Shown here one piece after another: positions 16,786 through 61,000 of a DNA stretch of 64,000 bases (its first letter is position 1; the number at the start of each line of letters is the position of its first letter). The stretch covers positions 1 through 64,000 of the forward strand of contig NIVC01003507.1 in NCBI GenBank assembly GCA_002269645.1, in the 5' to 3' direction. This DNA is from Macrostomum lignano. Lineage: Eukaryota. The notes beneath the pieces are model-generated. The model saw only the letters and a program-made list of their open reading frames with translations. It did no database searches and was not told where the DNA came from. The position numbers were made by a program, and so were the translations under genes.

Positions 16786-36087
<19,302 letters not shown>

Positions 36088-39946: not shown

Positions 39947-40063
39947 TGCTGTTACAGTGGAAGGATTCATATGCTTAATATGAGCACGGAACATGAATAA
40001 CAGGAAACATGAATACAATTCAGCCTAATCAGAGTTTCGCATCACCACTTTAAGCTACCTGGC

Positions 40064-42082
40064 ATGTCACAACAGCAGCAGCGGTCTAGCAAGCGAGTCT
40101 CAGTCGGCCCATCAGCAGGTAGACAGGCCGGCGGCAAGGCTACGACCAGCGGAGGCAGACTGTCGATGAGCGTAGGCTCAGGCGGCGGTGGCAAGCCGAA
40201 TCCCAAACTGAACTATAAGCAGACTTGCAGCCTGAAGGAGGGCCACGGCCAGTCTGTGTACGCGCTGCAATTCAACAATAGCAGCGGCAGCGAGCCCTGC
40301 CTGTTTGCCACCGCCGGGGCCTGCTATGTGACCGTCTACGCCTGCCTGCCTGACGGTGTTATTGAACTGCTTCAGGCGTACGCCGATCCGGCTGGCGATG
40401 AGGAGGAGTTCTGCTGTCTGGCCTGGTCGCTGGATCCGATTACTAGGCAACAGGTATGACCATCTAGGCAACAGGTGTGATCATCTAGGCAACAGGTATG
40501 ACCATCTAGGCAACAGGTGTGATCATCTAGGCAACAGGTGTGACCATCTAGGCAACAGGTGTGATCATCTAGGCAACAGGTGTGACCATCTAGGCAACAG
40601 GTGTGATCATCTAGGCAACAGGTGTGACCATCTAGGCAACAGGCTGTGACGTCTGACGTGACCATCTAGGCAACAGGTGTGACCATCTAAGCAACAGGTG
40701 TGACCATCTAGGCAACAGGTATGATCATCTAGGCAACAGGTATGACCATCTAGGCAACAGGCTGTGACGTGACCATCTAGGCAACAGGTGTGATTATCTA
40801 GGCAACAGGTATGACCATCTAGGCAACAGGCTGTGACGTGACCATCTAGGTAACAGGTATGACCATCTAGGCAACAGGTATGACCATCTAGGCAACAGGT
40901 ATGACCATCTAGGCAACAGGTATGACCATCTAGGCAACAGGTATGACCATCTAGGCAACAGGCTGTGACGTGACCATCTAGGCAACAGGTATGACCATCT
41001 AAGCAACAGGTGTGATCATCTAGGCAACAGGTGTGACCATCTAGGCAACAGGTGTGATCATCTAGGCAACAGGTGTGATAATCTAGGCAACAGGTATGAC
41101 CATCTATGCAACAGGTGTGACAATCTAGGTAATTGGTGTTACGCAGATTCTAGGCAAAATGAATTAAGATCTAAGTCTATACAATGGATGTGAGGATCTA
41201 GACAATGGATGTGAGGATCTAGACAATGGATGTGAGGGTCTAGACAATATGTGTGAGGATCTAGACAATGGATGTGAGGATCTAGACAATGGATGTGAGG
41301 ATCTAGACAATGGATGTGAGGATCTAGACAATGGATGTGAGGATCTAGACAATGGATGTGAGGGTCTAGACAACAGGCAGCTTTCAAACCCCCGGGTTTG
41401 AGGGCCAAGCCTCTTTGCTTTTTTAACTTGGAAAGCCTATAAAACATCAGTTTGAAACCCATCTCAGGTGATATTGACGGCCGGTCGACGCGGCGTCATC
41501 CGCGTGATTTGTCCATCCATGGCTGCCTGTCTGAAGAGCTTAGTCGGCCACGGTAACAGTGTCAATCACCTGAAGGTGAGCCCGCGCAATCCAGCCCTGC
41601 TATTCAGCTTCTCCAAGGACTACACGGCCAGAGCGTGGAATCTGGCCACCGGCCATCAGGTGGCCATCTTCGGCGGCTGCGACGGGCACCGCTCTGAGGT
41701 GCTGCACGGCGACGTGAATCTGGACTGCAGCCTGCTGCTCTCCTGCGGCATGGATCATTCTGTCCGGCTGTGGCGCCTGGATCGGCCGGAGTTTGAGCGG
41801 GCGGCCCGCCTCTCGGAGACCTGGTCGGACGAGGATGAGAAGCGCCGGTTCCCCACCTGGATGCAGCATCATCCGGATTTTGTCACGCGAGAGGTGCGAC
41901 CCCGTTTGATTTGGGATTTGGACTAAGATAGATAGACAGGCACTAAGACAGACAGACAGACAGACAGACATGCAGGCAGCAGACATACTGCCTGTCTATC
42001 TGTGTCTGTCACAGACAGACAGACACTAAGACAGGTAGACAAGACAGGTAGACAGACAGACAGTCAGGTAGGCATGTACTCG

Positions 42083-42154
<72 letters not shown>

Positions 42155-42236
42155 TAGACAGACAGGTAAACAGATAAACAGACACAGATAGACAGACAGT
42201 CAGGTAGACAGACAGACAGGTAGACAGACAGACAGG

Positions 42237-42292
<56 letters not shown>

Positions 42293-43731
42293 TAGACAGA
42301 CACGTAGACAGGTAGACGGACACAGACAGACAGACAGACAGGTAAATAGACAGAAAGACAGGTAGACAGACACAGACAGACAGGTAGACAGGTAGACAGG
42401 TAGACATGTGTATAGCATATAGAATATACATGGTTTTGTGTTTGATTTTTAGATAAGTAAGTGATGTCAAAGTTATTTTAGCTTCTTTGCTGGTAGGCAC
42501 ATGCAGATAAATATGTAGATAAGTAAGACAGGTAGGCAGATAGCTAGCTGTGTCTAAAGATGTATGCCAAATTGTCTTTTTCTTGTTCCTATTCAGGTGC
42601 ACGGCAACTACATCGACTGCGCTGCCTGGTTTGGCAACTGCATCCTGTCAAAGTCGTGCGAATCCTGCGTTGTCTTGTGGAAGCCTGGCAGTTTGAAATC
42701 GGCCGATTGTGGCCCGTTGAGGCACACTGACAATGCCATGTCTATACTGTACCAGTTCGAGGTGAAGAACTGTGATATTTGGTTCATCAAGTTCGATCTG
42801 CACCTGCCAACCAAGGTTGGACTTCGGCTTGTACTTTTATCTTCGGGAATCAGAATACCAGCTCCTTTCCCAGGGTCACTCTGCCGCCCCTATCATATCT
42901 CTGAGGATCACTCTGCCGCCCGTATCATAGCTCTGAGGATCACTCTGCCGCCCCTATCATAGCTCTGAGGATCACTCTGCCGCCCCTATCATAGCTCTGA
43001 TGATCACTCTGCCGCCCCTATCATAGCTCTGAGGATCACTCTGCCGCCCCTATCATAGCTCTGAGGATCACTCTGCCGCCCCTATCATAGCTCTGAGGAT
43101 CACTCTGCCGCCCCTATCATAGCTCTGAGGATCACTCTGCCGTCCCTATCATAGCTCTTAGGGTCACTCTGCCGCCCCTATCATAGCTCTTAGGGTCACT
43201 TGCCGCCCCTATCATAGCTCTTAGGGTCACTCTGCCCCCAACTATCATAGCTCTTAGGGTCACTCTGCCGCCCCTATCATAGCTCTTAGGGTCACTCTGC
43301 CGCCCCTATCATAGCTCTTAGGGTCACTCTGCCCCCAACTATCTCAGCTCTGAGGGTCACTCTGTCCCCAACTATACCAGCTGTGAGGGTCACTCTGACC
43401 CCCAATTATCCCAGCTCCGGGGGTCACTCTGCCGTCAACTATCGCGTATTAACAATCCCAGGACCTGAATTAAATCAATCCATCTGCATTCCAGCGCCTG
43501 GCCCTGGGCAATTCCATCGGCAAAGTGCAACTATTCGACTTGGACGCGCCGGACATTTTCGATATGCGGCCAGCAACGCTGAACGTCACTAAAGGCCAAG
43601 GCGCAGTCAGGCAGACCTGCTTTAGCCGCGACGGATCGACACTACTGTGCGTCTGCGACTTCGGCCTGGTTGTACGATTCGATCTGGACAAGCAGAGCGC
43701 CGCTGCCGCCGCGGCAGCTGCTGCCAAATAG
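40064..43731 (+). CDS. EED: Polycomb protein EED/ESC (PRC2 WD40 subunit), 4 exons: 40064-40453, 41468-41893, 42597-42815, 43495-43731; 423 aa
   Basis: Motifs LKEGHGQSVYALQFN, LVGHGNSVNHLK, VAIFGGCDGHRSEVL, SCGMDHSVRLW, VHGNYIDC, ILSKSCE..VVLWKPG, CDIWFIKF, LALGNSIGKV and VRQTCFSRDGS are colinear with EED. All introns are GT-AG, phase 0. Confidence 0.96.
40443..41130. repeat. 21-bp array (CTAGGCAACAG-GTRTGACCAT)n starting inside exon 1 and reiterating the donor site
   Basis: Direct reading, ~30 copies. Confidence 0.96.
41167..41372. repeat. 21-bp array (ACAATGGATGTGAGGATCTAG)n in EED intron 1
   Basis: Direct reading, ~9 copies. Confidence 0.94.
41935..42410. repeat. (GACA)n microsatellite in EED intron 2
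   Basis: Direct reading. Confidence 0.95.
42875..43440. repeat. 32-bp array (CTCTGAGGATCACTCTGCCGCCCCTATCATAG)n in EED intron 3
   Basis: Direct reading. Confidence 0.95.
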
Positions 43732-45244
43732 GAGCCGAATGCAGTAGTCACGTGAGCTAATGCTGAAATTGACATGTGGTGCATGTATAGTATCTATGTA
43801 TATAGTTGCATGTACAAGTTTATTGTCAAAAAGTTTCTATTTCTCAATTAACGAAATAAAGCAGCTATCTGCAGGCTTCATTATCTAAGTCTTTCTTCTC
43901 GCTAGTGAAACTCTCAATTTTTATTTAATTAGATAAAAGCAACTGTAGGATCAATTCATTCGTGTTTCGCCGCTGAAAAAGGTTCATGCGCACTAATCCG
44001 TGTTTTTGCTCACTAAGTAGATACCGTGTGTCTGCAATTCGTGTGTTCGCAATTCCCTTGGTAGTTTTTTAACTTTGGTAACTAATTTACCGGCTGGAAT
44101 ATTGCTGCCAAAATACAATGCTTGGCCATACTTAGTATATTTGTCTATTGATAAGTTGTGCTAAAATACTTTTCTTCAATTCTGTTGTCTCATTTATTTT
44201 AAATTTAATACTTTTTATGTTTGATTGTGTAATATAATTTACGGTATTCGAATTCACAGTTAGACACCGTGACTAATCACTGGATTCACGTTAAGAAGTA
44301 TCAATAACATTAAAAGTCATGACCTGCGTGTAATGAGATGCAGCTAACTGCCGGGGCATATTCTGTGGAGCCGGTCAGCCAAAGCAGATGCAGGCTATTC
44401 CATAGCCCATACCCAGTATTTTACACGTACATTACACAAGTACACACGAACAGCTGATATCCATTTTACACAATTCTGATAGTATAGCTAATTTCAAATT
44501 ATACTTGTTTTACTGACATTAAACATTCTCAGCCACAGAGTCCACGCTACAGCGACTATTCGAAGGCAAGAATACAGATAACGTGCATACATGTACTATA
44601 CATCTACAAGTTGATTAGAAATGGCACTAACAATACACCTAGTCCAGCCGTAGCAGTAGAGTTTTGTGACGCATTTCTTTGCTGTTTTGTTTAAGGCTTA
44701 TAGCTTTTTCCTAATTTTTATTCTTTATAACTGTGGGTTAAAAGATTTTGTTAAACTTGCTAAGACATAAATAACTCGTTTTAACTTCATCAGTAAATGC
44801 CGAATTTTTGGCCACGTCGATCGATTCCTATAAATCATGCTCATTCCTCTAAATTTGATTAAAACTGTATAAAATACTGTAAAGTGTAGCAAAATACAAA
44901 GTAAATCTGCATTTTTTAGGTTTAATAAAGATTATAAAGGTTTTTTTCAACGCAAACAGCACCGAGGCACAGACTTTCTAGTACGACTTTTACGGTACAC
45001 ATCTTGATATTTTTAGAAGCGGTAGAGTTCGTAGATATTATAAACCATCCAGTAGGCCTACACTAGCATATGTCTAGATAGAAGTCAAAGTGGATTCTAC
45101 AGTATTTTATCATATGGACGATCACTGCTAATTATACACTAGTTTTATAGTAATAATAGGGCCTAGATAGGATAAATAGAATACGACTTTTATTATCCAA
45201 TCCAGCTATACTATCTTAAGGACCTAGCTAGCCCCTAATCAGCA

Positions 45245-48200
45245 ATGATTCTACTAACTATGATTGCGCGAGTGTCTGATGGTCTGCCATTGGCTGCTTC
45301 AATTCACAATGAAGAGGTATGATTAAAAATATAAAGACTAAATATTTTTAATTTCATTGGCAAATTGCCAATTTTAGTTAAATCAGATGCACTATGCATA
45401 GATCTTTTTAATATTATATCAAGTTAGTGCCTAGTAAGGCCTAAATAATGTAAATAATATTTAAGTCAAGGCTTTGTCTTTGTTGTTTATATAATTAATA
45501 TAGGCCCATATGGCTATAGGCCTATTTTGTCTGTATTATCATATAAATGCTAATTTTGCTAAATCAGTTTTTTGGTATATAAATATTGCAAAAATATAAT
45601 TTATGTGTACTCTAATATTTTTAGTCAGGTAATTATACATTTTGTCAACTAACATTTCCTCAATTAGGCTTAGCAGTTTATTAATTAGCCATTGTTAGGT
45701 ACTATCTAGGCCTATTATATTATAAAAAACCTATGGCAAAAACATTAGTCCTTAAACAAAAAACCTGACTTACTTACTACTTTTTATTGATTGAAAATTA
45801 ATTGTTAATCTTTAATAAATATTACTTAATATTAAATAGAGTATAAGAATTGCCTATAAGCAAATTGCCCACTAAGTTTTTTTCCTAGGCCTATTAAGGT
45901 TTGCCTTTTGCCTACAATGCTTTTTTCCTATAGCATATTAGTCAGCTAGATTGTATCTGCATTCCTCTCCTCCTAATGCTTAATAAGCCCTACTATCTAA
46001 CTCTAAGTCTAAGTCTTGAAGAGATTTAGAAGACTGAGCAATATAGGAAATGCATTAATTAATAGCTTATCAATGTACTTTCACATATATATATAGAACT
46101 AAATACCTACAAGAAAAATATGAATTTGAATCATTTGATATGCAATTATTATCAAAATGTTTTGATTGAGTAAATTGCTTTATTAAGACTTATTAAGCAT
46201 TGGAAGATAATATAGACAAAATCTACTATGTGCCTAAATGTGCTATAGGAAAACAACATTGTAGGCAAACTATAGCAAGAAAAATCTCTGTGGGTAATTC
46301 ACTTGCAAGCAAATTGCACTGCAGGCAAATCTTAGTAAAAATCTCAATGGGCAATTTGCCCATAGGCAAAATGCACTGCAGGAAAATCTTGATGAAAAAA
46401 GCTTTATAGGGAAATCTTAATGGGCAAATCTCTTATAGGAAAATCTTAGCTAGCAATTGATTTGTGGGCAATATAAGCCCTATTGGAATAAGTGGACAAT
46501 AGGTAGACTCTAAATCTAATTGTTTGTCACATTTTTAGAATTTTCTAATGTTGCGCTGCAGCTAGAGTCAAGGCAGATGGGGTTGCAGCATAGTGCAGTT
46601 TTGGGTAAACAGCAATAACAACTTTGTCTGTCTTATTAAGGCTAATTGCCTTGTCATCTAATCAGTAATATGCCTATATTTGATGCAAAAGTTAATATGT
46701 TCTATGTTGTATTGCATTTTTGAGCTACAATTTTAGACCCAATGTTTTGTGTCTGCAGGTTTTTACATTTATTCTATTAGGGTATGTGAACTAAAGGTTA
46801 TTTCAATAGCATTAACAAGTATAGCAAAAAGTTACAAAATATTGGGAAAGAAATAAATCAAATTAATACTTATATATGCAATAATTTATAAATATAATTT
46901 TAATGATAAAATCAAAAAGTAAAAAGTTGTTACATTCTAGGATCAATATTATAAGCAAGACATTAATTATACACATAAGCATATGTGTATTTAATTTGTA
47001 ATCTCAAAACTCCTTGTCAGTCTTATATTTTGGTTCTTTGTATTTTGGTCTTATTGATATTGCCATTAATGTTAATAATGACTGTTGTTTACTTAAAAAA
47101 GAATAATGCAAATTCACTTATCCATCAATGCAAAAAACTGTAATAGGCAGTCTGTCACTTTTAATAAAAAGATTACTATTTATTAACACCTATTAATGGT
47201 ATAATGCTTAGGCCCCTTAAATAGACTAGTGCCCAATATTATAACCAACTTACTTAAAAATTTCAAGTAATGCTTAAAGTGTTGCATAGATATTACAAGC
47301 ATAGTCAAACCATTTCTTGGAGCTATAGCAATCAAGTCTATCCTTACTATCCTTGATGCCATTTTGATAAGCAGGGTATCTTGAAGCTTGCTAATGCCTA
47401 CTAGGCATTTTGTAACTGTACAATATAACCTCAGAGCACAAAAGCATGATATACCATTGAGTATCAATTTTTAAAAAGTTATTTTCTAGGAGTGTACTGA
47501 AGCAGCTCGCGTGCAGCAAGATAAAGACCGCTTGTCCTTTAATAAAGTGCTGCGGCTGGGCCTTTTACGGCTCTAGTTTATTTGGACCATAGACAGTTCA
47601 AGCAGCAATGGCTGGCTCTGTCAAAAGTACATGTGTCCGCTATACCACTCCTCTCCCCCAGAGCCAGATAATGTTGCTCTTGCATTGTGTTCTTTAGGAG
47701 CTTAGCTGCTATGGCAAATGGCTGGGTCAGCTGCAATTACTTTGCCACTAACGCAATGGAAGCAACTGGGTTAGAAAAGGGTCACTGGCAGTAGATGACT
47801 GTGTTGGGGCGCCTAAATTGGTAGTGTGAAACTGTTAGTAGCACAGAAATTGAAAGCGCATGCAGAGTATTTGGCTGGCTCGACGGTGGATGTTCAGGGA
47901 CTATTCAAAAGTGTGAGCACTTTGCTGCTGATAGATCCAGCTGCAGGCCAGTGACATTGTGGGCGAGTTGAGGTTGTAGGCACCAGCATCCTTGAGGCTA
48001 AGGGCAGCGGCAGCAGTGGATGGTTGTGCTAATGATGATGCTGCTGGTACATATGCTATTGTGGTGATCCATCGGTAGCGTGGTGGGGTCTGCAGCACAG
48101 AAAAGTGCACTGATGCTTCGTCTGACATGTCCGCCTGTGCTGCTGGGACAAGGTATTGCCAAGGTGAGCCGCATTGATGTCACAGCATCAGGTAGGGCAT

Positions 48201-50438
48201 TGCAAGCAAACTCTGGCAGGCGAGAGCCCCTTACCCAGAGTGCACTGCTCACATATTGCATAACCACAGTGACCAGGAATCAGTGATGGTCATTTTGATG
48301 CAGCTCTAGTTAGAAGTGCTGAGCCAGATGCAGGGATCAAGGTGGCTGATGGCTTTGGCTGGACTCGGAAGACCTGGTGGCCAAAACTGTGACAAGGCAG
48401 CAGGTGAAAAGCTTGAAATACTCAGCTATGGCTAAGTATAGTCAGACTCACCACTGAAGCACCTCGCATGCGGCAAGATGAAGACTGCTTGTCCTTTAAT
48501 AAAGTGCTGCAGCTGGGCCTTTTATGGCTCTAGTTTATTTGAGCCATAGATAGTCTGAGCAGCAGTGGCTGGCTCTGTCAAAAGTACATGTGTCTACTAC
48601 AGTACACATTTTAAAAAAATTTTACATCACATCATTACTTCTTTTACTGGTGCAGCTATAATGAATTTGCCAAGTTGCCATAATGTCTGGTTGACAAAAT
48701 GCCAGTGGATGAAATTTCCTAGAACCAGCCTAAATACAAGTATACTTTTTTGTTTTTTAATTGTAAGCTCTTTGTAAAATGAAACTAAACAATACACTGG
48801 GGCCTACTAGACTATAAAGTACTATGTTCACTGACTTATAACTTTATTGAACCATTGAGTAAAATGAAAAATAATATTTTTATCTTGTATGGTTTTACTT
48901 TATACCTTAATTACTTTATAATCCCGTCGAACTTTTCACCCAGAATTTTTTCCGGAATTTAGTGATCCGGGCCCGATTTTTATTTGCTTAATAATACCTT
49001 AATTACTTTATAATATAACATTTAAAAAATCAATACCAACAAGCTATTTAAGGTAATATAACGGTATCATTAGTTTATGTTCATTAGAGTCAATAGTTAT
49101 GCAAGGACAGTAGGTTAAGTCTAAAAGTAGCATTGTTTTGTTAATTTTTCTACTAGAACCATATATTTATTTATGTACACATTATTGGTGTGTTTTTGAT
49201 AATTTACTACTCAATTTTCAAGAAACTTTTTAATCATATTTAAACTTCTTAATCTCATCTCTAACAGACTGCTCCCAACATGCCAGAGTACCAGAGCAAA
49301 GCCAAAAAATTGTTTCGCCGATTGAATTCTACTTCACCATCAAGGTGCAGTCTGGAATCTGGTGCCTACACATTCCAGTAAGTTCTTGTACCCCTCACAC
49401 TGATCTAGTTAGCTCGTTTTGTCTTATTTTTACAAATTCTGTCTCTAACTTGACCTTCAGAGGCTTCAATGACCCCATTTAATATTCGTGTCATTAGCCT
49501 TGGTCACCATTGAGCTCCTTGACCCCATATGACCCCAGAACTTTGATCACTACTGAGCTCCGTGACCCCATATGTCGAGAAAAATAAGACTGAAAACACT
49601 AGAACTAAATTAGATGTTAAATTGAATAAGTAAGATAAGGAGCCAGTAAGTGGGCGCAGGGCCCAAACCAGTATATTTATATGACATTAAATTGCAGGGG
49701 GTTTGAATTGAAGATAATAAAGAGAGGGGTGGAGTGCGCGACTAAAGAGAGAGGTGAGAATGGAGAGCCAATCAGAAGGCAGCAGGGGAGAGAGAGATAA
49801 GAATAACAAGATTGAGCTAGACAGAGAGAGAGAAAACAGAGTAAACAGAGACAAGTGAAGGTGAACTAAGAAATGAATAGGAAAGTCGCGACACCATATG
49901 ACCCCTGACTTCGATCACTACTGACCTCCGTGACCCCAAATGACCTCTGGCCTATTTGAACAGCTACCAGATCGACTCGGGAGTCTGCTACCTGGCCCTT
50001 GCCGGTTGCAATTTCTCTAAACGCTTGGCCTTCTCCTACCTGGACGATCTCCGTCGCGAATTCGCCAACCAATTCGACACCGTCCGGGTGGACTCGGTGG
50101 CCCGGCCCTACCATTTCATAGAATTCGAGCAGTACATCAAGAAGGCTCGCCGCTCATTTGTTGACAGCCGGGCCAACCGCAATCTGGCCATGCTGGGCGC
50201 CGAGCTGCAGGATGTCCAACGGATTATGGTAGAAAATATGGACGAAGTGCTGGCCAGGGGCGAGTCCTTAGCAACGCTGGACGACAAGGCTAGCCACCTG
50301 TCGTTGCTGTCGCGCAGGTATCGCGACGATGCAGCGTATTTGAATTTGCGCTCGGTTTACGCCAGATACGGCATCGCCTGCATTGTCATTTTGATGCTGT
50401 TCTGCTACATCTACGAGGGTCACTCAGAAAGTTCTTAG
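45245..50438 (+). CDS. SEC22: Vesicle-trafficking R-SNARE SEC22 (longin-SNARE-TM); exons 45245-45316, 49268-49377, 49964-50438; the last 7 residues and stop come from the mariner TIR; the native tail is displaced to 51724-51744
   Basis: MILLTMIARVSDGLPLAAS|..EYQSKAKKLFRRLN..P.RCSLESGAYTFH|Y.I..GVCYL...LAFSYLDDL..RPYHFIEF..ELQDVQRIMVENMDEVLARGESL..LS..YRDDAAYLN is colinear with SEC22B. Exons 1 and 2 are absent from the ORF track and were found by reading; phases are compatible. Confidence 0.95.
47496..48594. mobile_element. Decayed element bounded by 142-bp direct repeats (47496-47637 and 48453-48594, ~90% identical)
   Basis: The repeats align directly and contain AATAAA. The outer ends read TGTACTG (47493) and CAGTACA (48606). 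No TSD was found; class uncertain. Confidence 0.6.
49573..49893. mobile_element. Solo LTR, 321 bp, in SEC22 intron 2
   Basis: TGTCG...CGACA termini with a perfect 5-bp TSD CCATA (49568-72 and 49894-98). It contains CCAAT and TATA-like elements and interrupts a short GACCCC-rich repeat. Confidence 0.88.
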
Positions 50439-51723
50439 CCTGAACAAGAAAACAGCAACAAATGAACTAAAAAACGACTACAAGTGCTCAAAATACTCTC
50501 CACCGGCATTGATACAGGCTTGCATCCTGTGAAACCAGCTGTCGAAGCAATGCCGCCAATCCTCATCCCGGAGCTCCTCGATGATGTTTTTGAACTCATT
50601 TACAGCTTCTTCCGGTGAAGAAAAAACCTGGCCCTTCAGAATCTCCTTGCACTTCGGAAACAGAAAAAAGTCGCACGGTGCCAGGTCTGGACTGTAAGCA
50701 GGGTGAGTCATCAGCTGGACCCCACAGTCAGCCAGAAACTCCAGAGTTTGAGCCGCCGTGTGCGCGCTGGCGTTGTCGTGGTGCAGAAGCACCCCACGCA
50801 TTCCGCACCTTGGGCGCCTCTGGCTCACAGCAGAAAAGACCTTGGGCAGGCAAACCGTTGTGTACCAGTCAGCGGTGACTGTCTGGCGATCTTCAAGTGA
50901 AACGGAAGCCACATGCCCAGTGCGCATGAAGAAACAGGCCACCATCTGCTTGCCGACACTCCGGCTGCGTCGAAACTTTGTGGGGCTGTCCTCGTCTCCA
51001 AAGGTCCACATGGCTGACTGGCGCTTGCTTTCGGGGTCGTATTGATAAATCCAGGTCTCATCGCCCGTGAGGATGTCCCAGATACGCCGGCTGGTCCCGG
51101 ATTCGAATTTCTGCAGCATGAATCGGCACCAAGCCACCCTGGTGTCCTTCTGCACGTCCGACAGCTGATGGGGGATCCACCGGGAAGCCAGCTTCCGCAC
51201 TCCAAGGTGTTCGTGCATAATGGCGTGCACACTCCCCGATCCAATACCGATCTCCTGCTGGATCTGCTGGTAGGTCACTCGCCGGTCAGCGGCAATCATG
51301 CTGGACACAGCGCAGATATTTTCTGGAGTCACTGCGTCACAGGGTCTCCCGGATCGATGTTCATCTTCGAGGCTTTCTCGACCTCGGCGAAACTCAGCGA
51401 ACCAGTTTTTGACGGTTGCGTATGAAGGACATACATGGGTGAAAACGTTCTGTAAAGTTTGATACGATTCGGCCGAAGACTTGCCTTGCTTGAAGTGCAA
51501 GTAAATCATTGCTCTGAAGTCGCGATTTTCCAGCTTCATTGTTGAATTGAAGAACTCAGGGGGTGAACTGACTTTAACTCGCTGCAGTGGACTCAAAAGT
51601 GGCTGCTTCTGTTTGAAATTTTTGCTGCGATACTTTTAAAAGTTGGTCTTTACCATAGACAAATTTCATGCTTCTACGTCTCGTGGATCCTACTCAGGCT
51701 AAAGACTTTCTGAGTGACCCTCG
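50414..51723 (-). mobile_element. Full-length mariner transposon (irritans-like CGAGGG ends), 1310 bp, TA TSD
   Basis: TA|CGAGGGTCACTCAGAAAGTTCTTAGCCTGA at 50414 and TCAGGCTAAAGACTTTCTGAGTGACCCTCG|TA ending at 51723: ~30-bp TIRs with 2 mismatches. Confidence 0.97.
50478..51539 (-). CDS. Mariner transposase, 353 aa, DD34D, intact
   Basis: MKLENRDFRAMIYLHF HTH, WIPHQL, TGDETW, HHDNASAH and YSPDLAPCD, with 34 residues between the second and third Asp; no stops. Confidence 0.96.
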   Translation of the reverse strand: MKLENRDFRAMIYLHFKQGKSSAESYQTLQNVFTHVCPSYATVKNWFAEFRRGRESLEDEHRSGRPCDAVTPENICAVSSMIAADRRVTYQQIQQEIGIGSGSVHAIMHEHLGVRKLASRWIPHQLSDVQKDTRVAWCRFMLQKFESGTSRRIWDILTGDETWIYQYDPESKRQSAMWTFGDEDSPTKFRRSRSVGKQMVACFFMRTGHVASVSLEDRQTVTADWYTTVCLPKVFSAVSQRRPRCGMRGVLLHHDNASAHTAAQTLEFLADCGVQLMTHPAYSPDLAPCDFFLFPKCKEILKGQVFSSPEEAVNEFKNIIEELRDEDWRHCFDSWFHRMQACINAGGEYFEHL

Positions 51724-52211
51724 TACTTCAAATTCCTGTGGTAGACTAAGTTTAAAAACTAATGAGGTGCCGAAGCAATTGACTATTTAATTACAGTCAT
51801 AGTTACTCTTACTGTTTACCCAATTAGGAAAATGCAGAAATAAGAATATAGAATGACCTGACCTGATTTTCTGAGAAATTTCTGAGAAACTGAGTTACTG
51901 ACCTGAACCAGGCGTTGGCTTAGTTGTTGATTGATTCAATTCCCGTCTTTCTTGAACAACATTCCGTGCCTTTTAATTTTTTGTGCTATTTTCATTGGTA
52001 TTCTTCTATGACAGGTGATTTCTCGCTTTTTTGATTTGCATAATATTAGCCTTTTTATGTAATTTGCAAAATTACGTCTTATCAAACGGTGCTTTTCTGT
52101 AAGAGTATTTGCCTTGCTTAACTATACTTTGGCAATGCAAACAGTCCATCAGCGACTGTTAGTTTTTATCCTTTGAAACTTTTGTAGGTGAATTGTTTAT
52201 TTTTATTACAG

Positions 52212-53672
52212 TCCTGTTAGACATTGGAAATCCTGTTCGATATTATACATCCTGTTAGATATAAATACTGTTAGACAGTATAAATCTTTTTAGACAGTCG
52301 AGATCCTGTTAGACAGTAGAAATCCTGTTGGATATGCAGTAGGAACCCTGTTAGACAGTAGAAATCCTGTTAGACAGTAGAAATCCTGTTAGACAGTAGA
52401 AATCCTGTTAGACAGTATAAATCTTTTTAGACAGTCGAGATCCTGTTAGACAGTAGAAATCCTGTTGGATATGCAGTAGGAACCCTGTTAGACAGTAGAA
52501 ATCCTGTTAGACAGTAGAAATCCTGTTAGACAGTAGAAATACTGTTAGACAGTAGAAATCCTGTTAGACAGTAGAAATACTGTTAGACAGTAGAAATACT
52601 GTTAGACAGTAGAAATACTGTTAGACAGTAGGAACCCTGTTAGACAGTAGGAACCCTGTTAGACAGTAGGAACCCTGTTAGACAATAGAAACCCTGTTAG
52701 ACAGTAGGAACCCTGTTAGACAGTAGAAATCCTGTTAGACAGTAGAAATACTGTTAGACAGTAGAAATACTGTTAGACAGTAGAAATACTGTTAGACAGT
52801 AGGAACCCTGTTAGACAGTAGGAACCCTGTTAGACAGTAGGAACCCTGTTAGACAATAGAAACCCTGTTAGACAGTAGAAATACTGTTAGACAGTAGAAA
52901 TACTGTTAGACAGTAGAAATACTGTTAGACAGTAGAAATACTGTTAGACAGTAGAAATCCTGTTAGACAGTAGAAATACTGTTAGACAGTAGAAATACTG
53001 TTAGACAGTAGAAATACTGTTAGACAGTAGAAATACTGTTAGACAGTAGAAATACTGTTAGACAGTAGGAACCCTGTTAGACAGTAGGAACCCTGTTAGA
53101 CAATAGAAACCCTGTTAGACAGTAGAAATCCTGTTAGACAGTAGAAATACTGTTAGACAGTAGAAATACTGTTAGACAGTAGAAATACTGTTAGACAGTA
53201 GAAATACTGTTAGACAGTAGAAATACTGTTAGACAGTAGAAATACTGTTAGACAGTAGGAACCCTGTTAGACAGTAGGAACCCTGTTAGACAATAGAAAC
53301 CCTGTTAGACAGTAGAAATCCTGTTAGACAGTAGAAATACTGTTAGACAGTAGAAATACTGTTAGACAGTAGAAACACTGTTAGACAGTAGAAATACTGT
53401 TAGACAGTAGGAACCCTGTTAGACAGTAGGAACCCTGTTAGACAGTAGGAACCCTGTTAGACAATAGAAACCCTGTTAGACAATAGGAACCCTGTTAGAC
53501 AGTAGGAACCCTGTTAGACAGTAGGAACCCTGTTAGACAGTAGGAACCCTGTTAGACAGTAGGAACCCTGTTAGACAGTAGGAACCCTGTTAGACAGTAG
53601 GAACCCTGTTAGACAGTAGGAACCCTGTTAGACAGTAGGAACCCTGTTAGACAATAGGAACCCTGTTAGACA
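52212..53672. repeat. 20-bp minisatellite (CTGTTAGACAGTAGAAATAC / ...GGAACC)n
   Basis: Direct reading. Confidence 0.97.
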
Positions 53673-54315
53673 GGTCATCCTGTTATAGAGAAGAATGCAA
53701 GAAACGTTGTTAGACCTTTTTAGAAGATCCTTCTTTTAAACAGACTGTAATAAAGCGGGGTTTAGCAGAAGGGCTGAAAGCTTTTAGGATTTGGCTGGTA
53801 TCACATCTATCTTTATTCAATACTCTCTATGCATTCCACTTGGATATCTTTTGCAATAAACAAGTCGAATACAGCAAATGGATTGCTAAATTATTTAATT
53901 TGCGCCACGTCGGGAACCTGCATGAGTCTGGAACTATATAATATTGAATAGTATGAAGATTTTGTGTTCAGAGTCTAGTCTCGATGACCTTGGGGCGTCA
54001 ACTACTTAGCTTTATAATCCGAGCACTATATTATATCGAGCAGATTCTTTATGAGTATCAACTATCGTTTCTGTATGCCCAGATCGCAGCTCTCAGAGCG
54101 GCACTGTGTGTTTTATTCGACTGCTGCTCCATGCGCTCTCTCCATTCCTCTTCCTCTCAGCTGCTGGGTGCGCACTTCTAGCTAGAGTCTCACTTGTTTA
54201 TCAGGCTATGGATCCCTTGCCTTATAATTGAATTTAAAAGTACTTTTCCTGTTTGTAAGTTGGGAGTGACTTTTTGTACAGCTGTACAGTTGAGGCCGTT
54301 TGAATTTGGGCCTAA

Positions 54316-54815
54316 CTGTTAGATAGGTTATGAATAACTGTTATATAGGATGTTGATAACTGTTAGATAGGGTGTTGAAAACTGTTAGATAGGGTGTTGA
54401 TAACTGTTAGATAGGGTCTTGATAGCTGTTAGATAGGATGTTGATAACTGTTAGAATCAGATAGAATGTTCCTAACTGTTAGATAGAATGTTGATAACTG
54501 TTAGATAGGGTATGATACATGTTAGATAGGGTGTTGATAACTGTTAGATAGGGTGTTGATAACTGTTAGATAGGGTCTTGATAGCTGTTAGATAGGTCGT
54601 TCCTAACTGTTAGATAGGGTGTTGATAACTGTCAGATAGGGTGTTGATAGCTGTTAGATAGGGTGTTGATAACTGTTAGATAGGATGTTGCTAACTGTTA
54701 GATAGGGTTTTGATAACTGTTAGATAGGATATTGATAACTGTTAGATATGATGCTGATAACTGTTAGATATGATGTTGATAACTGTTAGATAAATATTGA
54801 TGATGCTAGATATAG
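54316..54815. repeat. 22-bp minisatellite (CTGTTAGATAGGGTGTTGATAA)n
   Basis: Direct reading. Confidence 0.95.
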
Positions 54816-55082
54816 TAACATTTCGAAAAATTCACAAAGCCTAACTCTGCACACTTGATAAGAAAAAGACAATTATATTCTTTCCAGCTACGTCAGCGGC
54901 CGCAGCAGCAACAGTGGCGGCAGCGGCAGCAGAAGCAGCAGACGTTGGCTGCTTAGACTGCCAATAAAATTTAAAAAATCGTCAGTGCTATTCTTTTGTA
55001 CTTGTGCTTACCTTGTATACTTTTGCCAGCTTTGGTTTAGTCCTGTAGTCCTGTATTTCTGATTAATCGATTCGAACTCGAG

Positions 55083-58000
55083 ATGAAGGGTTTCTTATCG
55101 AAGCTCGGAGGTCCTCCAGCCTCATCGTCAATGTCGTCATCGTCATCGACCTCTGCCGGAGCTTCTCATGACGCAGGCGGCGGCGGTTTCATTGGCAGGA
55201 CCTTCCACCTGCACCGCTACCAGCTGGTTGTGGAGGAGAAAATCGCCGAAGGCGGCTTCGCCGTTGTGTTTAAAGTGCGCAGCACTCAAGACGGTCGAAT
55301 ATTTGCGCTAAAACGCATGTGCGTCAATAGTGAGAACAGTCTGCAGATCTGCCAGCGGGAGATCACCATTGTGGTGCGTGTTGTCATGGTGATCTATTGT
55401 GCGCGGCTGTGGAACAGTTTGTACACACAGCTATGGAACAGCTCCCCTCACTGTCAGTGTGCACACACTGCTATGGAACAGCTCCCCTCACTATCAGTGT
55501 GCACACACAGCTATGGAACAGCTCCCCTCACTGTCAGTGTGTACACACACAGCTATGGAACAGCTCCCCTCACTGTCAGTGTGTACACACACAGCTATGG
55601 AACAGCTCCCCTCACTGTCAGTGTGTACACACACAGCTATGGAACAGCTCCCCTCACTGTCAGTGTGTACACACACAGCTATGGAACAGTTCCCCTCACT
55701 GTCAGTGTGCACACACAGCTATGGAACAGCTCCCTCACTGTCAGTGTGTACACACACAGCTATGGAACAGTTCCCCTCACTGTCAGTGTGCACACACAGC
55801 TATGGAACAGCTCCCCTCACTGTCAGTGTGTACACACGCAGCTATGGAACAGCTCCCCTCACTGCCAGAGTGTACACACACAGCTATGGAACAGCTCTCT
55901 CACTGTCAGAGTGTACACACACAGCTATGGAACAGCTCCCTCACTGTCAGAGTGTACACACGCAGCTATGGAACAGCTCCCCTCACTGTCAGTGTGTACA
56001 CACGCAGCTATGGAACAGCTCCCCTCACTGTCAGAGTGTACACACACAGCTATGGAACAGCTCCCTCACTGTCAGTGTGTACACACACAGCTATGGAACA
56101 GTTCCCCTCACTGTCAGTGTGTACACACACAGCTATGGAACAGCTCCCCTCACTGTCAGTGTGCACACACACACAGCTATGGAACAGCTCCCCTCACTGT
56201 CAGTGTGCACACACACACAGCTATGGAACAGCTCTCCTCACTGTCAGTGTGCACACACAGCTATGGAACAGCTCCCCTCACTGTCAGAGTTTGTACACAT
56301 AGCATCAATATTTGAAAAGCCTACTTATTGACTTAGCAAAAGAACCAAGTCTGCAATTGTTCAATTTGCCTAGTCACGTATTGGCCTCGGGCATATCCAA
56401 ATAAATTTGCATAATGATATTTTAAACTTCGGATTGGCTTCATCAGCCCGCCGCATCCAATGACCTTTATTTGCAGCGGTCGCTAACCCACAAGAACATT
56501 ATTAAATACGTTGACGACTGCGTTAATCACCTGCCAAACGGTGTTTACGAAGTGCTGCTACTCATGACCTACTGCAAAAGTGAGTAGGGAGGTAATCTGT
56601 TGATTTACGTCATGTGCGTAGAACAGTGGGACAAAAAGAGGTGGAGAGATAAAGGGAAGGATATGTGGATAAATAGAGGGGTAGAGTGTGAGAAAGAAGG
56701 ATAGAGGGGCAGAGATAGAGGGGTAGAGTGAGAGATAGAGGGGTAGAGTTAGAGATAGAGGGGTAGAGTGAGAGATAGAGGGGTAGAGTGAGAGATAGAG
56801 GGGTTAGAGTGTGAGAAAGAAGGATAGAGAGGCAGAGATAGAGGGATAGAGAGGCAGAGTGAGAGGGGTAGAGTGAGAGATAGAGGGGTGGAGTGTGAGA
56901 TAGAAGGATAGAGAGGCAGAGATAGAGGGATAGAGAGGCAGAGTGAGAGGGGTAGAGTGAGAGATAGAGGGGTGGAGTGTGAGATAGAAGGATAGAGGCA
57001 GAGATAGAGGGATAGAGAGGCAGAGTGAGAGGGGTAGAGTGAGAGATAGAGGGGTAGAGTGAGAGATAGAGGGGTAGAGTGAGAGATAGAGAGGTAGAGT
57101 GAGAGATAGAGGGGTAGAGTGAGAGATAGAAGTGTAGAGTGTGAGATAGAAAGATAGAGAGGCAGAGATAGAGGGGTAGAGTGTGAGATAGAAGGATACA
57201 GAGGCAGAAATAGAGGGATAGAAAGGCAAAGATAGAGGGGTAAAGTGTGAGATAGAAGGATACAGAGGCAGAGATAGAGGAATAGAGAGGCAAAGATAGA
57301 GGGGTAGAGTGTGAGATAGAAGGATACAGAGGCAGAAATAGAGGGATAGAGAGGCAAAGATAGAGGGGTAAAGTGTGAGATAGAAGGATACAGAGGCAGA
57401 GATAGAGGGATAGAGAGGCAAAGATAGAGGGGTAGAGTGTGAGATAGAAGGATACAGAGGCAGAAATAGAGGGATAGAGAGGCAAAGATAGAGGGGTAAA
57501 GTGTGAGATAGAAGGATAGAGGCAGAGATAGAGGGTTAGCTAGGGAGGAATAGAACTAGATGCGAGTTCAGATGATTTGAATCAAAGTCGAGTCAAACTG
57601 AAACTGAGACCGCAGGCTGCGCAGCCGAGGCTGTACTATGTGACCTTCACCCGTGCCCGCAGAGACAGTAGTGGGGCAGCTGAACGATTGCGCCCAGTCT
57701 GGCGGGCACTTGACTGAGTCGCATATTCTGCGCATATTCTGCGACGTATGCGAGGCCGTGTCGAGGCTGCACCACTGTCACACGCCCGTGCAGCACCGCG
57801 ATCTCAAAGTAGAGAATGTACTAATAGACGATTCCGGCAACTATGTACTGTGCGACTTTGGCAGCGCCACTGTGCGCGTGCTGCAGCCAGCTGTTCAGGG
57901 CGCCGCTCCAGTTGAAGAGGAGATTCAAAAGTACACGACGTTAGCCTATCGCAGCCCTGAGATGGTGGACCCGTACTCTGGCCGGCCTATCGGCACTAAG

Positions 58001-61000
58001 GCTGACATCTGGGCGCTGGGCTGTATGCTGTACAAGTTGGCGTACTTCAGTCTGCCATTCGGCGAAAGCACCCTGGCTATCAGTTCCGGCCGTCTGTGCC
58101 TGCCTGACCGGCCTGAATATTCTGTTGAATTGCGCAAACTGATTCGCTATGCGTTGCAGCCGGACCCCAGCCTGAGGCCGGACATATTCCAGATCTGTCA
58201 TTTGGCATTTCAATTGGCTGGCCGAGTTAATCCGGTGCAAAATGTCAATGTGAGCTGGGCGTCAGCGCTAATTAGATGACGAGGAATTCCGTGCCCTAGT
58301 TACTCACGCCGTTTACCCAGAGATATCAATTTAAGTCACCCAAAAAATAATAAGGGCGGAGAGCAGTGGCGGATTTAAAAGGAGGGGGGCGGGGGCTGCC
58401 GATGATGGCGCCCCCTTTTCTTTGCCTTAAAAAAGATCTTTACCGCCTTCAGTTTGTTCAGTATGGCGCCCCTCAAGATCGCCCTCTAGTGTATATCATA
58501 GCGCCCCTCTAGTGTATATTATGGCGCCCCTCTAGTGTATATTATGGCGCCACTCTAGTGTATATTATGGCGCCCCTCTAGTGTATATTATGGCGCCCCT
58601 CTAGTGTATATTATGGCGCCCCTCTAGTGTATATTATGGCGCCACTCTAGTGTATATTATGGCGCCCCTCTAGTGTATATTATGGCGCCACTCTAGTGTA
58701 TATTATGGCGCCACTCTAGTGTATAGAATGGCGCCCCTCTAGTGTATATTATGGCGCCACTCTAGTGTATATTATGGCGCCACTCTAGTGTATAGAATGG
58801 CGCCCATCTAGTGTATATTATGGCGCCCCTCTAGTGTATATTATGGCGCCACTCTAGTGTATATTATGGCGCCACTCTAGTGTATATTATGGCGCCCCTC
58901 AAGATCGCCCTCTAGTGTATATTATGGCGCCACTCTAGTGTATATTATGGCGCCACTCTAGTGTATATTATGGCGCCACTCTAGTGTATATTATGGCGCC
59001 CCTCAAGATCGCCCTCTAGTGTATATTATGGCGCCACTCTAGTGTATATTATGGCGCCACTCTGGTGTATAGGATGGCGCCACTCTAGTGTATATTATGG
59101 CGTCATTCTAGTGTATATTATGGCGCCACTCTAGTGTATATTATGGCGCCACTCTAGTGTATATTATGGCGCCACTCTAGTGTATATTATGGCGCCTCCC
59201 TAGTGTATATTATGGCGTCATTCTAGTGTATATTATGGCGTCATTCTAGTGTATATTATGGCGTCATTCTAGTGTATATTATGGCGCCCCTCTAGTGTAT
59301 ATTATGGCGCCCCTCTAGTGTATATTATGGCGCCACTCTAGTGTATATTATGGCGCCACTCTAGTGTATATTATGGCGCCACTCTAGTGTATATTATGGC
59401 GCCACTCTAGTGTATATTATGGCGCCCCCACTCTAGTGTATATTATGGCGCCACTCTAGTGTATATTATGGCGCCACTCTAGTTTATATTATGGCGCCAC
59501 TCTAGTGTATATTATGGCGCCACTCTAGTGTATATTATGGCGCCCCCACTCTAGTGTATATTATGGCACCCCCACTCTAGTGTATATTATGGCGCCACTC
59601 TAGTGTATAGGATGGCGCCACTCTAGTGTATATTATGGCGCCACTCTAGTGTATATTATGGCGCCCCCACTCTAGTGTATATTATGGCACCCCCACTCTA
59701 GTGTATATTATGGCGCCACTCTAGTGTATATTATGGCACCCCCACTCTAGTGTATATTATGGCACCCTTACTCTAGTGTATATTATGGCACCCCCACTCT
59801 AGTGTATATTATGGCGCCACTCTAGTGTATATTATGGCACCCCCACTCATGGTTAATATCCGCCCCCCCCCCATTTTATAATTCTAAATCCGCCCCCGGC
59901 GAAGATGAAAGGAGAAAAGAGAGAGTAGACAAGAGCATAGATAAGAAGAAATAAAAGGAGAGGAGAGAGCTGAGAGGCGACACTAACCCTGAGTGGCTGG
60001 ATTACTATTGCTAAGTTTCAAAGGACTCTTTTAGTGGCACAGAATGCACAGTAGGCGTCTGTACCTTTTCAAAATCAGGCAATATCGCACCTGAAAATAA
60101 ACTTTGTGTCTGTGTCTACTAGACCTAGTGCTAGGATTTTACAAGTGTTTAAATAGAAGTTTTACCCAGCTGGTTGCATTTGTCTTTGACCAAACAGAAA
60201 TCGGAAATACCTCGCTTCGACATTCTCAACGCGCCGCCAACTGAAAGCGAAAATCGTCGCGAAATCAGCAAATCGCCTAGCGTTGGGTGAGTCGCCGTAG
60301 TCTTTGTGTCCGTCTTGGCGTGTCTTTGTGTCCGTCTTAGCGTTTTTGTGTCTGTTTTAGCGTGTCCTTGTGTGTCTTAACGTGCCTTTGTGTCTGTCTT
60401 AACTTGCCTTTGTGTCCGTCTTGGCGTGTCTTTGTGTCCGTCTTGGCGTGTCTTTGTGTCCGTCTTAGCGTTTTTGTGTCTGTTTTAGCGTGTCCTTGTG
60501 TGTCTTAACGTGCCTTTGTGTCTGTCTTAACTTGCCTTTGTGTCCGTCTTGGCGTGTCTTTGTGTCCGTCTTGGCGTGTCTTTGTGTCCGTCTTGGCGTG
60601 TCCTTGTGTCCGTCTTAGCGTGTCCTTATGTCCGTCTTGGCGTGGCTTTGTCTTGGCGTGTCTTTGTGTCCGTCTTGGCGTGTCCTTGTGTCCGTCTTAG
60701 CCTGTTTTTGTGTTCGTCTTAGCATGCCTTTGTGTCCATCTTGGCGTGTCTTTGTGTCCGTCTTAGCGTGTCCTTATGTCCGTCTTGGCGTGGCTTTGTG
60801 TCTGTCTTGGCGTGTCTTTGTGTCCGTCTTGGCGTGTCCTTGTGTCCGTCTTGGCGTGTCCTTGTGTCCGTCTTGGCGTGGCTTTGTGTCTGTCTTGGCG
60901 TGTCTTTGTGTCCGTCTTAGCGTGCCTTTGTGTCCGTCTTGGCGTGTCTTTGTGTCCGTCTTAGCGTGTTTTTGTGTCCGTCTTAGCGTGTTTTTGTGTC

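What the first reader, a model, noticed from the sequence alone, without database searches (positions are those of the whole stretch)
50405..51744. Intact mariner inserted in the last Tyr codon of SEC22 rewrites the membrane-anchor tail
The TA target is the first two bases of TAC. Removing 50414-51723 plus one TA restores ...TGC TAC ATC TAC TTC AAA TTC CTG TGG TAG, or CYIYFKFLW* (216 aa), matching the SEC22B end (VYVRFWWL*). With the insertion, the TIR supplies C GAG GGT CAC TCA GAA AGT TCT TAG, giving CYIYEGHSESS* (218 aa). The frame stays open, but the hydrophobic/basic end is replaced by an acidic polar tail. That shortens the TM segment to ~16 residues and could change tail-anchored insertion or ER/Golgi sorting. 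Excision leaving a typical mariner footprint would create further variants. It is a clear case of a TIR being exonised into an essential trafficking gene.
Basis: partly seen in the sequence, partly recalled or inferred. Interest (0 to 1): 0.8.

Follow-up and report, generated by a model that had tools for sequence, protein, structure and literature searches.

The report
Mariner transposon inside one SEC22 copy
A full-length mariner transposon sits 16 bases before the stop codon of one of three near-identical SEC22 gene copies in the flatworm Macrostomum lignano; the insertion is real, but it is an ordinary copy-specific transposon insertion, its effect on the protein is untested, and the public annotation hides it as an intron.

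Summary
A 1310-bp mariner (50414-51723) has 30-nt terminal inverted repeats (28/30), a TA duplication and a full-length D,D34D transposase ORF. It splits Tyr211 of a three-exon SEC22 gene. Read-through gives ...CYIYEGHSESS* (218 aa). Removing the element plus one TA gives ...CYIYFKFLW* (216 aa).

The window is Macrostomum lignano contig NIVC01003507.1 (Mlig_3_7). Two syntenic paralogous loci in the same assembly carry the empty site with a single TA and an intact FKFLW end. A more distant paralog ends the same way. So this is one disrupted copy among at least three, which fits the published three-subgenome structure of this genome, not a rewritten single-copy essential gene.

GenBank protein PAA51083.1, annotated at this locus, skips exactly 1312 nt across non-canonical borders. 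That is a transcript-mapping artefact.

The hydrophobic core that remains (16 residues) is within the range of natural Sec22 anchors. What is lost is the conserved aromatic/basic end.

No transcript evidence could be reached. Published "SOS splicing", which removes exonic DNA transposons from mRNA when their inverted repeats pair, is a serious alternative to the read-through protein. The element's terminal repeats can pair (-64 kcal/mol).

Ordinary in kind, and modestly useful as a natural test case.

The parts
45245..45316 (+). SEC22 exon 1 (MILLTMIARVSDGLPLAASIHNEE), donor GT at 45317
   Evidence: tblastn of P0001/P0002; sequence read
49268..49377 (+). SEC22 exon 2 (TAPNMPEYQSKAKK...GAYTF + CA of the His codon); acceptor AG at 49266-67, donor GT at 49378
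49964..50413 (+). Native part of SEC22 exon 3 (end of the longin domain, R-SNARE motif with the zero-layer Arg in VQRIM, start of the membrane anchor up to the TA of Tyr211)
50412..50413 (.). Left copy of the TA target-site duplication (first two bases of the Tyr211 codon TAC)
   Evidence: the empty sites in L002/L003 have one TA
50414..51723 (-). Complete mariner element, 1310 bp, transposase antisense to SEC22
   Evidence: only one copy in the window and none in L002/L003
50414..50443 (.). TIR next to the transposase 3' end. On the + strand it supplies C GAG GGT CAC TCA GAA AGT TCT TAG, that is the third base of the Tyr codon, EGHSESS, and the stop at 50436-38
50478..51539 (-). Transposase CDS, 353 aa plus stop; HTH_48 N-terminus, D,D34D catalytic domain, WIPHQL and YSPDLAPCDFFLF motifs
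51694..51723 (.). TIR next to the transposase 5' end, 28/30 identical to the other TIR
51724..51725 (.). Right copy of the TA target-site duplication
51726..51744 (+). Displaced native end of the SEC22 CDS: C TTC AAA TTC CTG TGG TAG (FKFLW*)
   Evidence: identical in L002 and L003

Best explanation
**Shown:** This is a germline, copy-specific insertion of a full-length mariner (Tc1/mariner superfamily, D,D34D) into a TA inside codon 211. That codon lies 16 nt before the stop of one of three syntenic paralogous copies of the SEC22 longin R-SNARE gene (Mlig007138) in Macrostomum lignano line DV1, contig NIVC01003507.1. The insertion happened by ordinary cut-and-paste integration with TA duplication, after this copy diverged from its 99.5%-identical sister copy. 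The other two copies keep the clean, footprint-free empty site. Apart from the insertion, this copy is undamaged: splice sites are intact and it has only one conservative private amino-acid change (I201).

**Inferred:** The allele is tolerated because two intact near-identical copies and a more distant paralog supply SEC22 function. If the element stays in the mRNA, the product is a 218-aa Sec22. It would keep a still-hydrophobic 16-residue anchor core but would have EGHSESS in place of the conserved FKFLW end, making it most likely a neutral-to-hypomorphic variant. Whether that protein is made at all is open (see rivals).

**Annotation:** The deposited GenBank protein for this locus (PAA51083.1, ending FKFLW) results from treating the transposon as an intron. 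The locus as sequenced does not encode it.
For: - **TIRs, TSD and ORF:**
- **Locus identity:** window 41289-59744 is 100% identical to NIVC01003507.1 at the same coordinates.
- **Empty sites:** L002 (NIVC01000059.1) and L003 (NIVC01001519.1) have a single TA and the same WD40-SEC22-kinase synteny.
- **Copy relationships:** window vs L002 is 99.53% over 7515 nt including introns; L003 introns are 87-95% identical.
- **Coding integrity:** all three CDS are intact at 216 codons once the element is removed. The changes private to the window copy are 2 synonymous plus I201.
- **Annotation arithmetic:** the annotated gene range 49289-51744 with a 185-aa product requires 89+450+19 = 558 nt, so it skips exactly 1312 nt. 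The three possible borders are TA..CG, AC..GT and CG..TA.
- **Annotation pipeline:** it mapped de novo transcripts with BLAT (minId 0.8, near-best hits kept) and RNA-seq with up to 1000 multimaps (PMC5730564).
- **Genome structure:** three paralogous subgenomes, with indels as the main difference between them (PMC10733133).
- **Second assembly:** UniProt model A0A1I8IP75 from the ML2 assembly carries this copy's I201 and ends ...CYIYE, so the junction codon is present there too.
- **Anchor hydrophobicity:** within the natural Sec22 range.
Against: - No read-level or transcript-level data could be examined.
- ML2 and Mlig_3_7 were built from the same PacBio reads, so the second assembly is not independent at the read level.
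- Whether the insertion is fixed in the DV1 line or segregating is unknown.
- The genomic copy number and activity of this mariner could not be measured. No M. lignano protein above 65% identity exists in the protein collection.
- The functional claim (tolerated or hypomorphic) rests on redundancy and a crude hydrophobicity comparison.
Confidence: 0.8

Rival explanations
1. First reader's mechanism. The allele is transcribed and the mariner is retained in the mature mRNA. The TIR is translated, and a 218-aa Sec22 ending EGHSESS is the main product, with altered tail-anchored insertion, ER/Golgi sorting or fusion activity.
For: - The frame stays open into the TIR and stops after 7 codons in the last exon, so exon-junction-dependent NMD is not expected.
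- There is no AATAAA/ATTAAA on the + strand inside the element, so read-through to the native 3' end is plausible.
- Adding even one charged residue to the lumenal end of synaptobrevin-2 inhibits fusion (Ngatchou 2010 as cited in PMC5641348).
Against: - No transcript or protein with this tail is on record.
- Exonic DNA transposons are removed from 90-100% of host mRNAs in C. elegans, and also in human cells (PMC12779559).
- The remaining hydrophobic core is as long as in natural Sec22 proteins.
- Synaptobrevin tolerates lumenal fusions through flexible linkers.
- Two intact copies would mask any effect.
Confidence: 0.3
2. SOS-type splicing. The paired TIRs in the pre-mRNA trigger spliceosome-independent excision of the mariner (AKAP17A/CAAP1/RTCB pathway). 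This would yield a mixture of mRNAs with small indels at the last few codons, some with a near-native tail.
For: - The system is published for Tc1, Tc3 and Tc4 in C. elegans and for the mariner Hsmar2 in human cells. It acts on exonic and 3'-UTR insertions, needs only ITR base-pairing, and uses non-GU-AG sites (PMC12779559).
- In the + strand RNA the two TIRs plus TA can form a stem of about 32 bp, -64 kcal/mol versus -22 +/- 4 for shuffles.
Against: - The pathway has not been shown in any flatworm.
- The presence of AKAP17A and CAAP1 in M. lignano was not tested here.
- These TIRs are 30 nt and imperfect, versus 54 nt for Tc1.
- The precise 'intron' in GenBank is not evidence for it. SOS splicing is imprecise, and multimapping of transcripts from the empty copies explains the annotation.
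Confidence: 0.3
3. The copy is transcriptionally silent or on its way to becoming a pseudogene. The insertion has no protein-level consequence at all.
For: Three-fold redundancy relaxes selection. A transposon in the 3' end could attract small-RNA silencing, and the transposase would be transcribed antisense through SEC22 exon 3 (inference only).
Against: The promoter-proximal region, both introns and all splice sites are intact and 99.5% identical to the sister copy. No disabling substitutions have accumulated.
Confidence: 0.15
4. The GenBank model is right. The mariner behaves as a spliceosomal intron that is removed precisely, so the locus encodes the native FKFLW protein.
For: The deposited CDS PAA51083.1 joins across the element.
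Against: - All three possible borders are non-canonical (TA..CG, AC..GT, CG..TA).
- The best cryptic donor near the site scores 2.4 bits against about 7.2 for the gene's real donors, and no donor/acceptor pair restores FKFLW.
- The annotation pipeline maps transcripts to all near-identical copies.
Confidence: 0.02
5. Assembly artefact: a chimeric long read or mis-join placed a mariner inside the gene.
For: The genome is highly repetitive and the assembly is redundant.
Against: - A mis-join would not create a perfect TA duplication with both flanks continuing exactly in the paralogs' sequence.
- The contig is collinear with L002 for 7.5 kb upstream and again downstream.
- The junction codon also appears in an ML2-based model.
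Confidence: 0.03

Closest known systems
Mariner family of the Tc1/mariner (IS630-Tc1-mariner) superfamily; structural reference Mos1 transposase (PDB 3hos)
   Same: About 1.3 kb, TA duplication, TIRs of about 30 nt, a single ORF of about 350 aa with an HTH_48 N-terminus and a D,D34D catalytic domain. It aligns end to end with Mos1.
   Different: Only about 30% identical to Mos1. The nearest database proteins are 65% identical and of unknown host, and automatic annotation labels many relatives 'SETMAR-like'. The subfamily was not determined, and no description of this element in M. lignano was found in the library.
Exonic Tc1/Tc3/Tc4 and Hsmar2 insertions handled by SOS splicing (Zhao et al., Nature 2025, PMC12779559; earlier Rushforth & Anderson Tc1 work cited there)
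   Same: A DNA transposon with pairing-competent inverted repeats inside a coding exon of a conserved gene.
   Different: This is a natural insertion in a flatworm. No RNA data exist, and the host factors were not checked.
Paralog-specific indels in the three-subgenome M. lignano DV1 genome (Zadesenets et al. 2023, PMC10733133)
   Same: One of three syntenic copies differs by an insertion while point divergence stays low (0.5-2%).
   Different: Here the indel lands inside a coding sequence, and the public annotation masks it.
SEC22B / Sec22p longin R-SNARE
   Same: Longin domain, R-SNARE motif with the zero-layer Arg (VQRIM), and a C-terminal anchor ending in an aromatic/basic motif in the intact copies.
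   Different: In this copy the last five residues FKFLW are replaced conceptually by EGHSESS.

Membership tests
mariner (Tc1/mariner superfamily) | TA target-site duplication | tested here: met
   TA at 50412-13 and 51724-25; a single TA at the empty sites in L002/L003
mariner (Tc1/mariner superfamily) | Short terminal inverted repeats (about 28-30 bp) bounding an element of about 1.3 kb | tested here: met
   30-nt TIRs, 28/30 matches, element 1310 bp
mariner (Tc1/mariner superfamily) | Single transposase ORF with N-terminal paired HTH and a D,D34D catalytic triad | tested here: met
   353-aa ORF; HTH_48 E=4.8e-12. Full-length alignment to Mos1 with the three Asp aligned, and 34 residues between Asp 2 and Asp 3.
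mariner (Tc1/mariner superfamily) | Mobility: several near-identical copies, or demonstrated transposition | not testable with these tools
   One copy in the 64-kb window and none in the two 17-kb paralogous loci. [quoted passage not shown]
SEC22 longin R-SNARE | N-terminal longin domain plus R-SNARE (synaptobrevin) motif | tested here: met
   PF13774 and PF00957 above the gathering scores; 51-57% identity to metazoan SEC22b
SEC22 longin R-SNARE | C-terminal transmembrane anchor running to the end of the protein | tested here: inconclusive
   Native in L002/L003. In the window copy the 16-residue hydrophobic core is retained, but the conserved FKFLW end is replaced by 7 polar residues in the conceptual product.
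SOS-splicing substrate | DNA transposon within an exon, with inverted repeats able to base-pair in the transcript | tested here: met
   Exon 3 insertion; predicted stem of about 32 bp, -64 kcal/mol versus -22 +/- 4 for shuffles
SOS-splicing substrate | Host has AKAP17A, CAAP1 and RTCB, and transcripts show non-GU-AG excision near the ITRs | not testable with these tools
   No M. lignano proteome or RNA-seq is reachable, and no reliable query sequence was at hand
Exonised transposable element | TE-derived sequence present in mature, translated mRNA | not testable with these tools
   The exact 218-aa product is absent from the protein collection; no transcript data

The most novel reading that the evidence does not exclude
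The mariner is removed from this SEC22 copy's mRNA by SOS-type, spliceosome-independent splicing triggered by pairing of its terminal repeats. This would make the locus the first natural mariner substrate of that pathway in a spiralian. It could be tested with existing M. lignano RNA-seq, because three private SNPs (one of them 30 nt from the junction) phase reads to this copy.
Probability: 0.3. Interest if true: 0.55.

Novelty: new member of a known kind. Interest (0 to 1): 0.28.

Why it matters
- **Annotation correction.** GenBank PAA51083.1 (BOX15_Mlig007138g4) describes a protein that the locus as sequenced does not encode. The 1312-nt "intron" is a transposon plus its target duplication. 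Similar hidden insertions are probably common wherever transcripts are mapped to all near-identical copies of a polyploid genome.
- **Early divergence of paralogs.** The case shows how the three paralogous subgenomes of M. lignano begin to diverge functionally through transposon insertions.
- **A test of SOS splicing in flatworms.** M. lignano has RNAi, transgenesis and deep RNA-seq. A full-length mariner in a coding exon with phasing SNPs nearby is therefore a convenient natural test of whether SOS splicing operates in flatworms.
- **No evidence for SNARE tail remodelling.** As an example of SNARE tail remodelling it has no supporting evidence yet, and redundancy makes a phenotype unlikely.

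Tried and rejected
1. **Exact look-ups.** The 218-aa (insertion) protein, the 216-aa (restored) protein and the 353-aa transposase are all absent from the 15-billion-protein collection. This gives no transcript evidence either way.
2. **Homolog search with exon 3.** It returned only 12 clusters and no Logan-derived M. lignano fragments. The collection cannot answer the expression question.
3. **Cryptic spliceosomal removal.** I scanned GT donors at 50330-50520 and AG acceptors at 51600-51745 with a rough hand-made PWM. The best donor (AGG|GTCACT at 50419) scores 2.4 bits against about 7.2 for the real donors. None of the three candidate pairs restores FKFLW. Rejected.
4. **Literature on an M. 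lignano mariner.** Two searches found no description of this element. Supplementary Table 4 of PMC5730564 gives only 'DNA transposons 3.05%'. The Wasik et al. 2015 genome paper is not held, so I could not check how the ML2 gene models were built.
5. **Other copies of the element.** None in the window or in L002/L003. Copy number remains unknown.
6. **Mariner subfamily.** Not attempted beyond Mos1/SETMAR similarity, because no trustworthy reference set was available.
7. **Assembly chimera.** Considered and rejected, because of the perfect TA duplication and the exact continuity of both flanks with the paralogs.
Full report
**1.

Reading 49800-52200 and the inverted-repeat scan show arms 50412-50443 and 51694-51725 (32 nt, 94% complementary). 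These are two 30-nt terminal inverted repeats (28/30; mismatches at positions 20-21), each abutted by TA. The element is 50414-51723 (1310 bp).

The minus strand carries one long ORF. Taken from its ATG at 51539 down to 50478, it encodes 353 aa.
- Pfam finds the Mos1-type HTH_48 domain (E=4.8e-12) plus sub-threshold Transposase_1/DDE_3 hits.
- phmmer aligns residues 9-351 with residues 12-345 of Mos1 transposase (3hos, E=1.2e-34).
- GDETW, HHDNA and PCDFFLF sit on Mos1 GDEKW, HDNA and PSDYHLF. I count 34 residues between the second and third Asp, so the triad is D,D34D.
- Among 1047 database homologs, many are exactly 353 aa with 100% coverage. The ORF is therefore full-length.

"Intact mariner" is justified as a description of structure. 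Activity is not shown.

**2. The host gene**

The + strand ORF ending in the TIR has Longin and Synaptobrevin domains. Its best homolog is a Macrostomum lignano protein at 98% identity, followed by metazoan SEC22b at 51-57%.

tblastn and splice-site reading give three exons: 45245-45316, 49268-49377 and 49964 onward. Both introns have GT/AG borders.

The spliced CDS is 218 codons ending CYIYEGHSESS*, with the stop at 50436-38 inside the TIR. Deleting the element and one TA gives 216 codons ending CYIYFKFLW*, with the stop at 51742-44.

**3. Where the window comes from, and what the public annotation says**

A look-up of cluster member P0015 (PAA51083.1, BOX15_Mlig007138g4) returned a locus that is 100% identical to window 41289-59744 and has those same coordinates in NIVC01003507.1. 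That contig belongs to assembly GCA_002269645.1 (Mlig_3_7). The window is therefore the first 64 kb of that contig.

The annotated gene spans 49289-51744 but yields only 185 aa ending ...CYIYFKFLW. The arithmetic 89 + 450 + 19 = 558 nt means the deposited CDS jumps over exactly 1312 nt, which is the mariner plus one TA.
- The three possible placements of that "intron" have borders TA..CG, AC..GT or CG..TA.
- A scan for cryptic sites found nothing better than a 2.4-bit donor, against about 7.2 bits for the gene's real donors. No donor/acceptor pair restores FKFLW.
- The annotation was produced by BLAT-mapping a de novo transcriptome (minId 0.8, near-best hits kept) and by STAR with up to 1000 multimaps (PMC5730564).

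The simplest reading is that a transcript from an empty copy was laid over this locus. The locus as sequenced does not encode the deposited protein.

**4. Empty sites and redundancy**

Two other annotated copies were fetched: g5 on NIVC01000059.1 (L002) and g2 on NIVC01001519.1 (L003). Both show the same WD40-SEC22-kinase synteny.
- Both contain ...ATCTACTTCAAATTCCTGTGGTAG with a single TA, and neither has a mariner.
- The window is 99.53% identical to L002 over 7515 nt including introns. L003 is more diverged, with introns at 87-95%.
- All three CDS are intact at 216 codons once the element is removed. The window copy has only two private synonymous changes and I201 (ATT versus GTT).
- A fourth, 72%-identical paralog (Mlig004877, two copies) also ends ...YVYFKFLW.

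This matches the published finding that about 85% of the DV1 genome exists as three paralogous copies, which differ mainly by indels (PMC10733133).

The clean empty sites indicate that the insertion post-dates the split from L002. By general knowledge, mariner excision normally leaves a footprint, so the empty sites are unlikely to be excision products.

UniProt model A0A1I8IP75, from the earlier ML2 assembly, carries I201 and ends ...CYIYE. It therefore includes the first mariner-derived codon. ML2 and Mlig_3_7 share the PacBio reads, so this confirms the junction across assemblers, not across data sets.

**5. What the insertion does to the protein, if it is translated**

- The uncharged run is 17 residues (YGIACIVILMLFCYIYF) followed by KFLW in the native copies. 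In the insertion product it is 16 residues followed by EGHSESS.
- Natural Sec22 homologs recovered here have runs of 15-18.
- The best 15-residue window of the insertion product is about as hydrophobic as that of a fish SEC22b.

Membrane integration is therefore plausible. What is lost is the conserved aromatic/basic C-terminal motif.

For synaptobrevin-2, one added lumenal charge inhibits fusion, whereas flexible-linker fusions are tolerated (PMC5641348). A hypomorphic effect is conceivable but cannot be predicted.

There is no AATAAA/ATTAAA on the + strand within the element. The new stop lies in the last exon, so a stable read-through mRNA is possible.

**6.

Zhao et al. (Nature 2025, PMC12779559) report these findings.
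- Exonic and 3'-UTR DNA transposons (Tc1, Tc3, Tc4 in C. elegans; Tc1 and the mariner Hsmar2 in human cells) are excised from host mRNAs. In C. elegans Tc1 was removed from 90-100% of host mRNAs; excision in human cells is described only as efficient.
- The excision is spliceosome-independent and imprecise.
- It is triggered solely by base-pairing of the inverted repeats.
- It requires AKAP17A, CAAP1 and RTCB.

In the + strand RNA of this locus, the TIRs plus TA can form a stem of about 32 bp. The predicted energy is -64 kcal/mol, against -22 +/- 4 for shuffled partners.

If the pathway exists in flatworms, most mRNA from this copy would lack the element and would carry small indels in the last few codons. 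The EGHSESS protein would then be a minor product.

I could not test for the factors or for transcripts. I give the read-through outcome and the SOS outcome about equal weight (0.3 each) and silence of the copy 0.15.

**7. Verdict**

The structure is real and precisely described. The biological framing ("essential gene rewritten", "clear exonisation") is not supported, because the gene is at least triplicated and no RNA evidence exists.

In kind this is an ordinary, copy-specific transposon insertion in a transposon-rich neopolyploid genome. It has two useful by-products:
- a correction to a public gene model;
- a natural, phaseable test case for SOS splicing in a spiralian.

Interest is 0.28. 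Novelty: new member of a known kind.

Noticed in passing
window 49289-51744 (GenBank PAA51083.1, BOX15_Mlig007138g4): The deposited CDS is 5'-partial: it starts inside exon 2 and omits exon 1, which lies at 45245-45316, 3.9 kb upstream. It also treats the mariner plus one TA as a 1312-nt intron with non-canonical borders. The sister models g2 and g5 are 5'-partial too.
   Followed up: yes
window 50385 (GT) and 55041-55361; L002 12059-12379; L003 12912-13232: UniProt/ML2 model A0A1I8INX8 (P0017, 339 aa) joins SEC22 after ...GIACV to the 5' UTR and first exon of the downstream kinase gene, and then runs into antisense sequence. P0001 ends ...GIACVALA. Both leave the SEC22 anchor at the same weak GT. 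These are either chimeric gene predictions or read-through cis-splicing onto the kinase's trans-splice acceptor.
   Followed up: partly
window 1-4760 and many other sites (e.g. 14898-15708, 18451-19658, 24166-25913, 34100-35524, 38601-39948, 52212-53673, 55423-56287, 58480-59838): The window is packed with minisatellite arrays. These include a 17-mer repeated 283 times at the contig start, a 19-mer repeated 77 times just downstream of SEC22, and 42-mer and 23-mer arrays inside the kinase gene range. Strand composition is strongly skewed at 1-4000. This fits the reported 15% simple/tandem repeat content of the genome (PMC5730564).
   Followed up: no
window 47496-47637 and 48453-48594 (SEC22 intron 1): A direct repeat of 142 nt, 90% identical, with copies 957 nt apart, lies inside the 3.9-kb AT-rich first intron. 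It may be the ends of a small inserted element.
   Followed up: no
window 24166-25913 and 32926-33460: The same 43-nt tandem-repeat unit occurs in two arrays that flank a GC-rich (52-55%) block of about 7 kb. This may be a large retroelement or a duplicated segment.
   Followed up: no
window 50401-50409 and 51737-51745: The host flanks UCUGCUACA and UGUGGUAGA are complementary. In the predicted RNA structure they extend the TIR stem by a further 9 bp beyond an internal loop. This is probably chance.
   Followed up: no
L002 (NIVC01000059.1) SEC22 codons 133-134: The empty-site sister copy g5 carries two adjacent non-synonymous changes (R133H, N134S) just upstream of the SNARE motif. The mariner-bearing copy and L003 lack them. 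So the 'intact' copies are not identical in protein either.
   Followed up: partly
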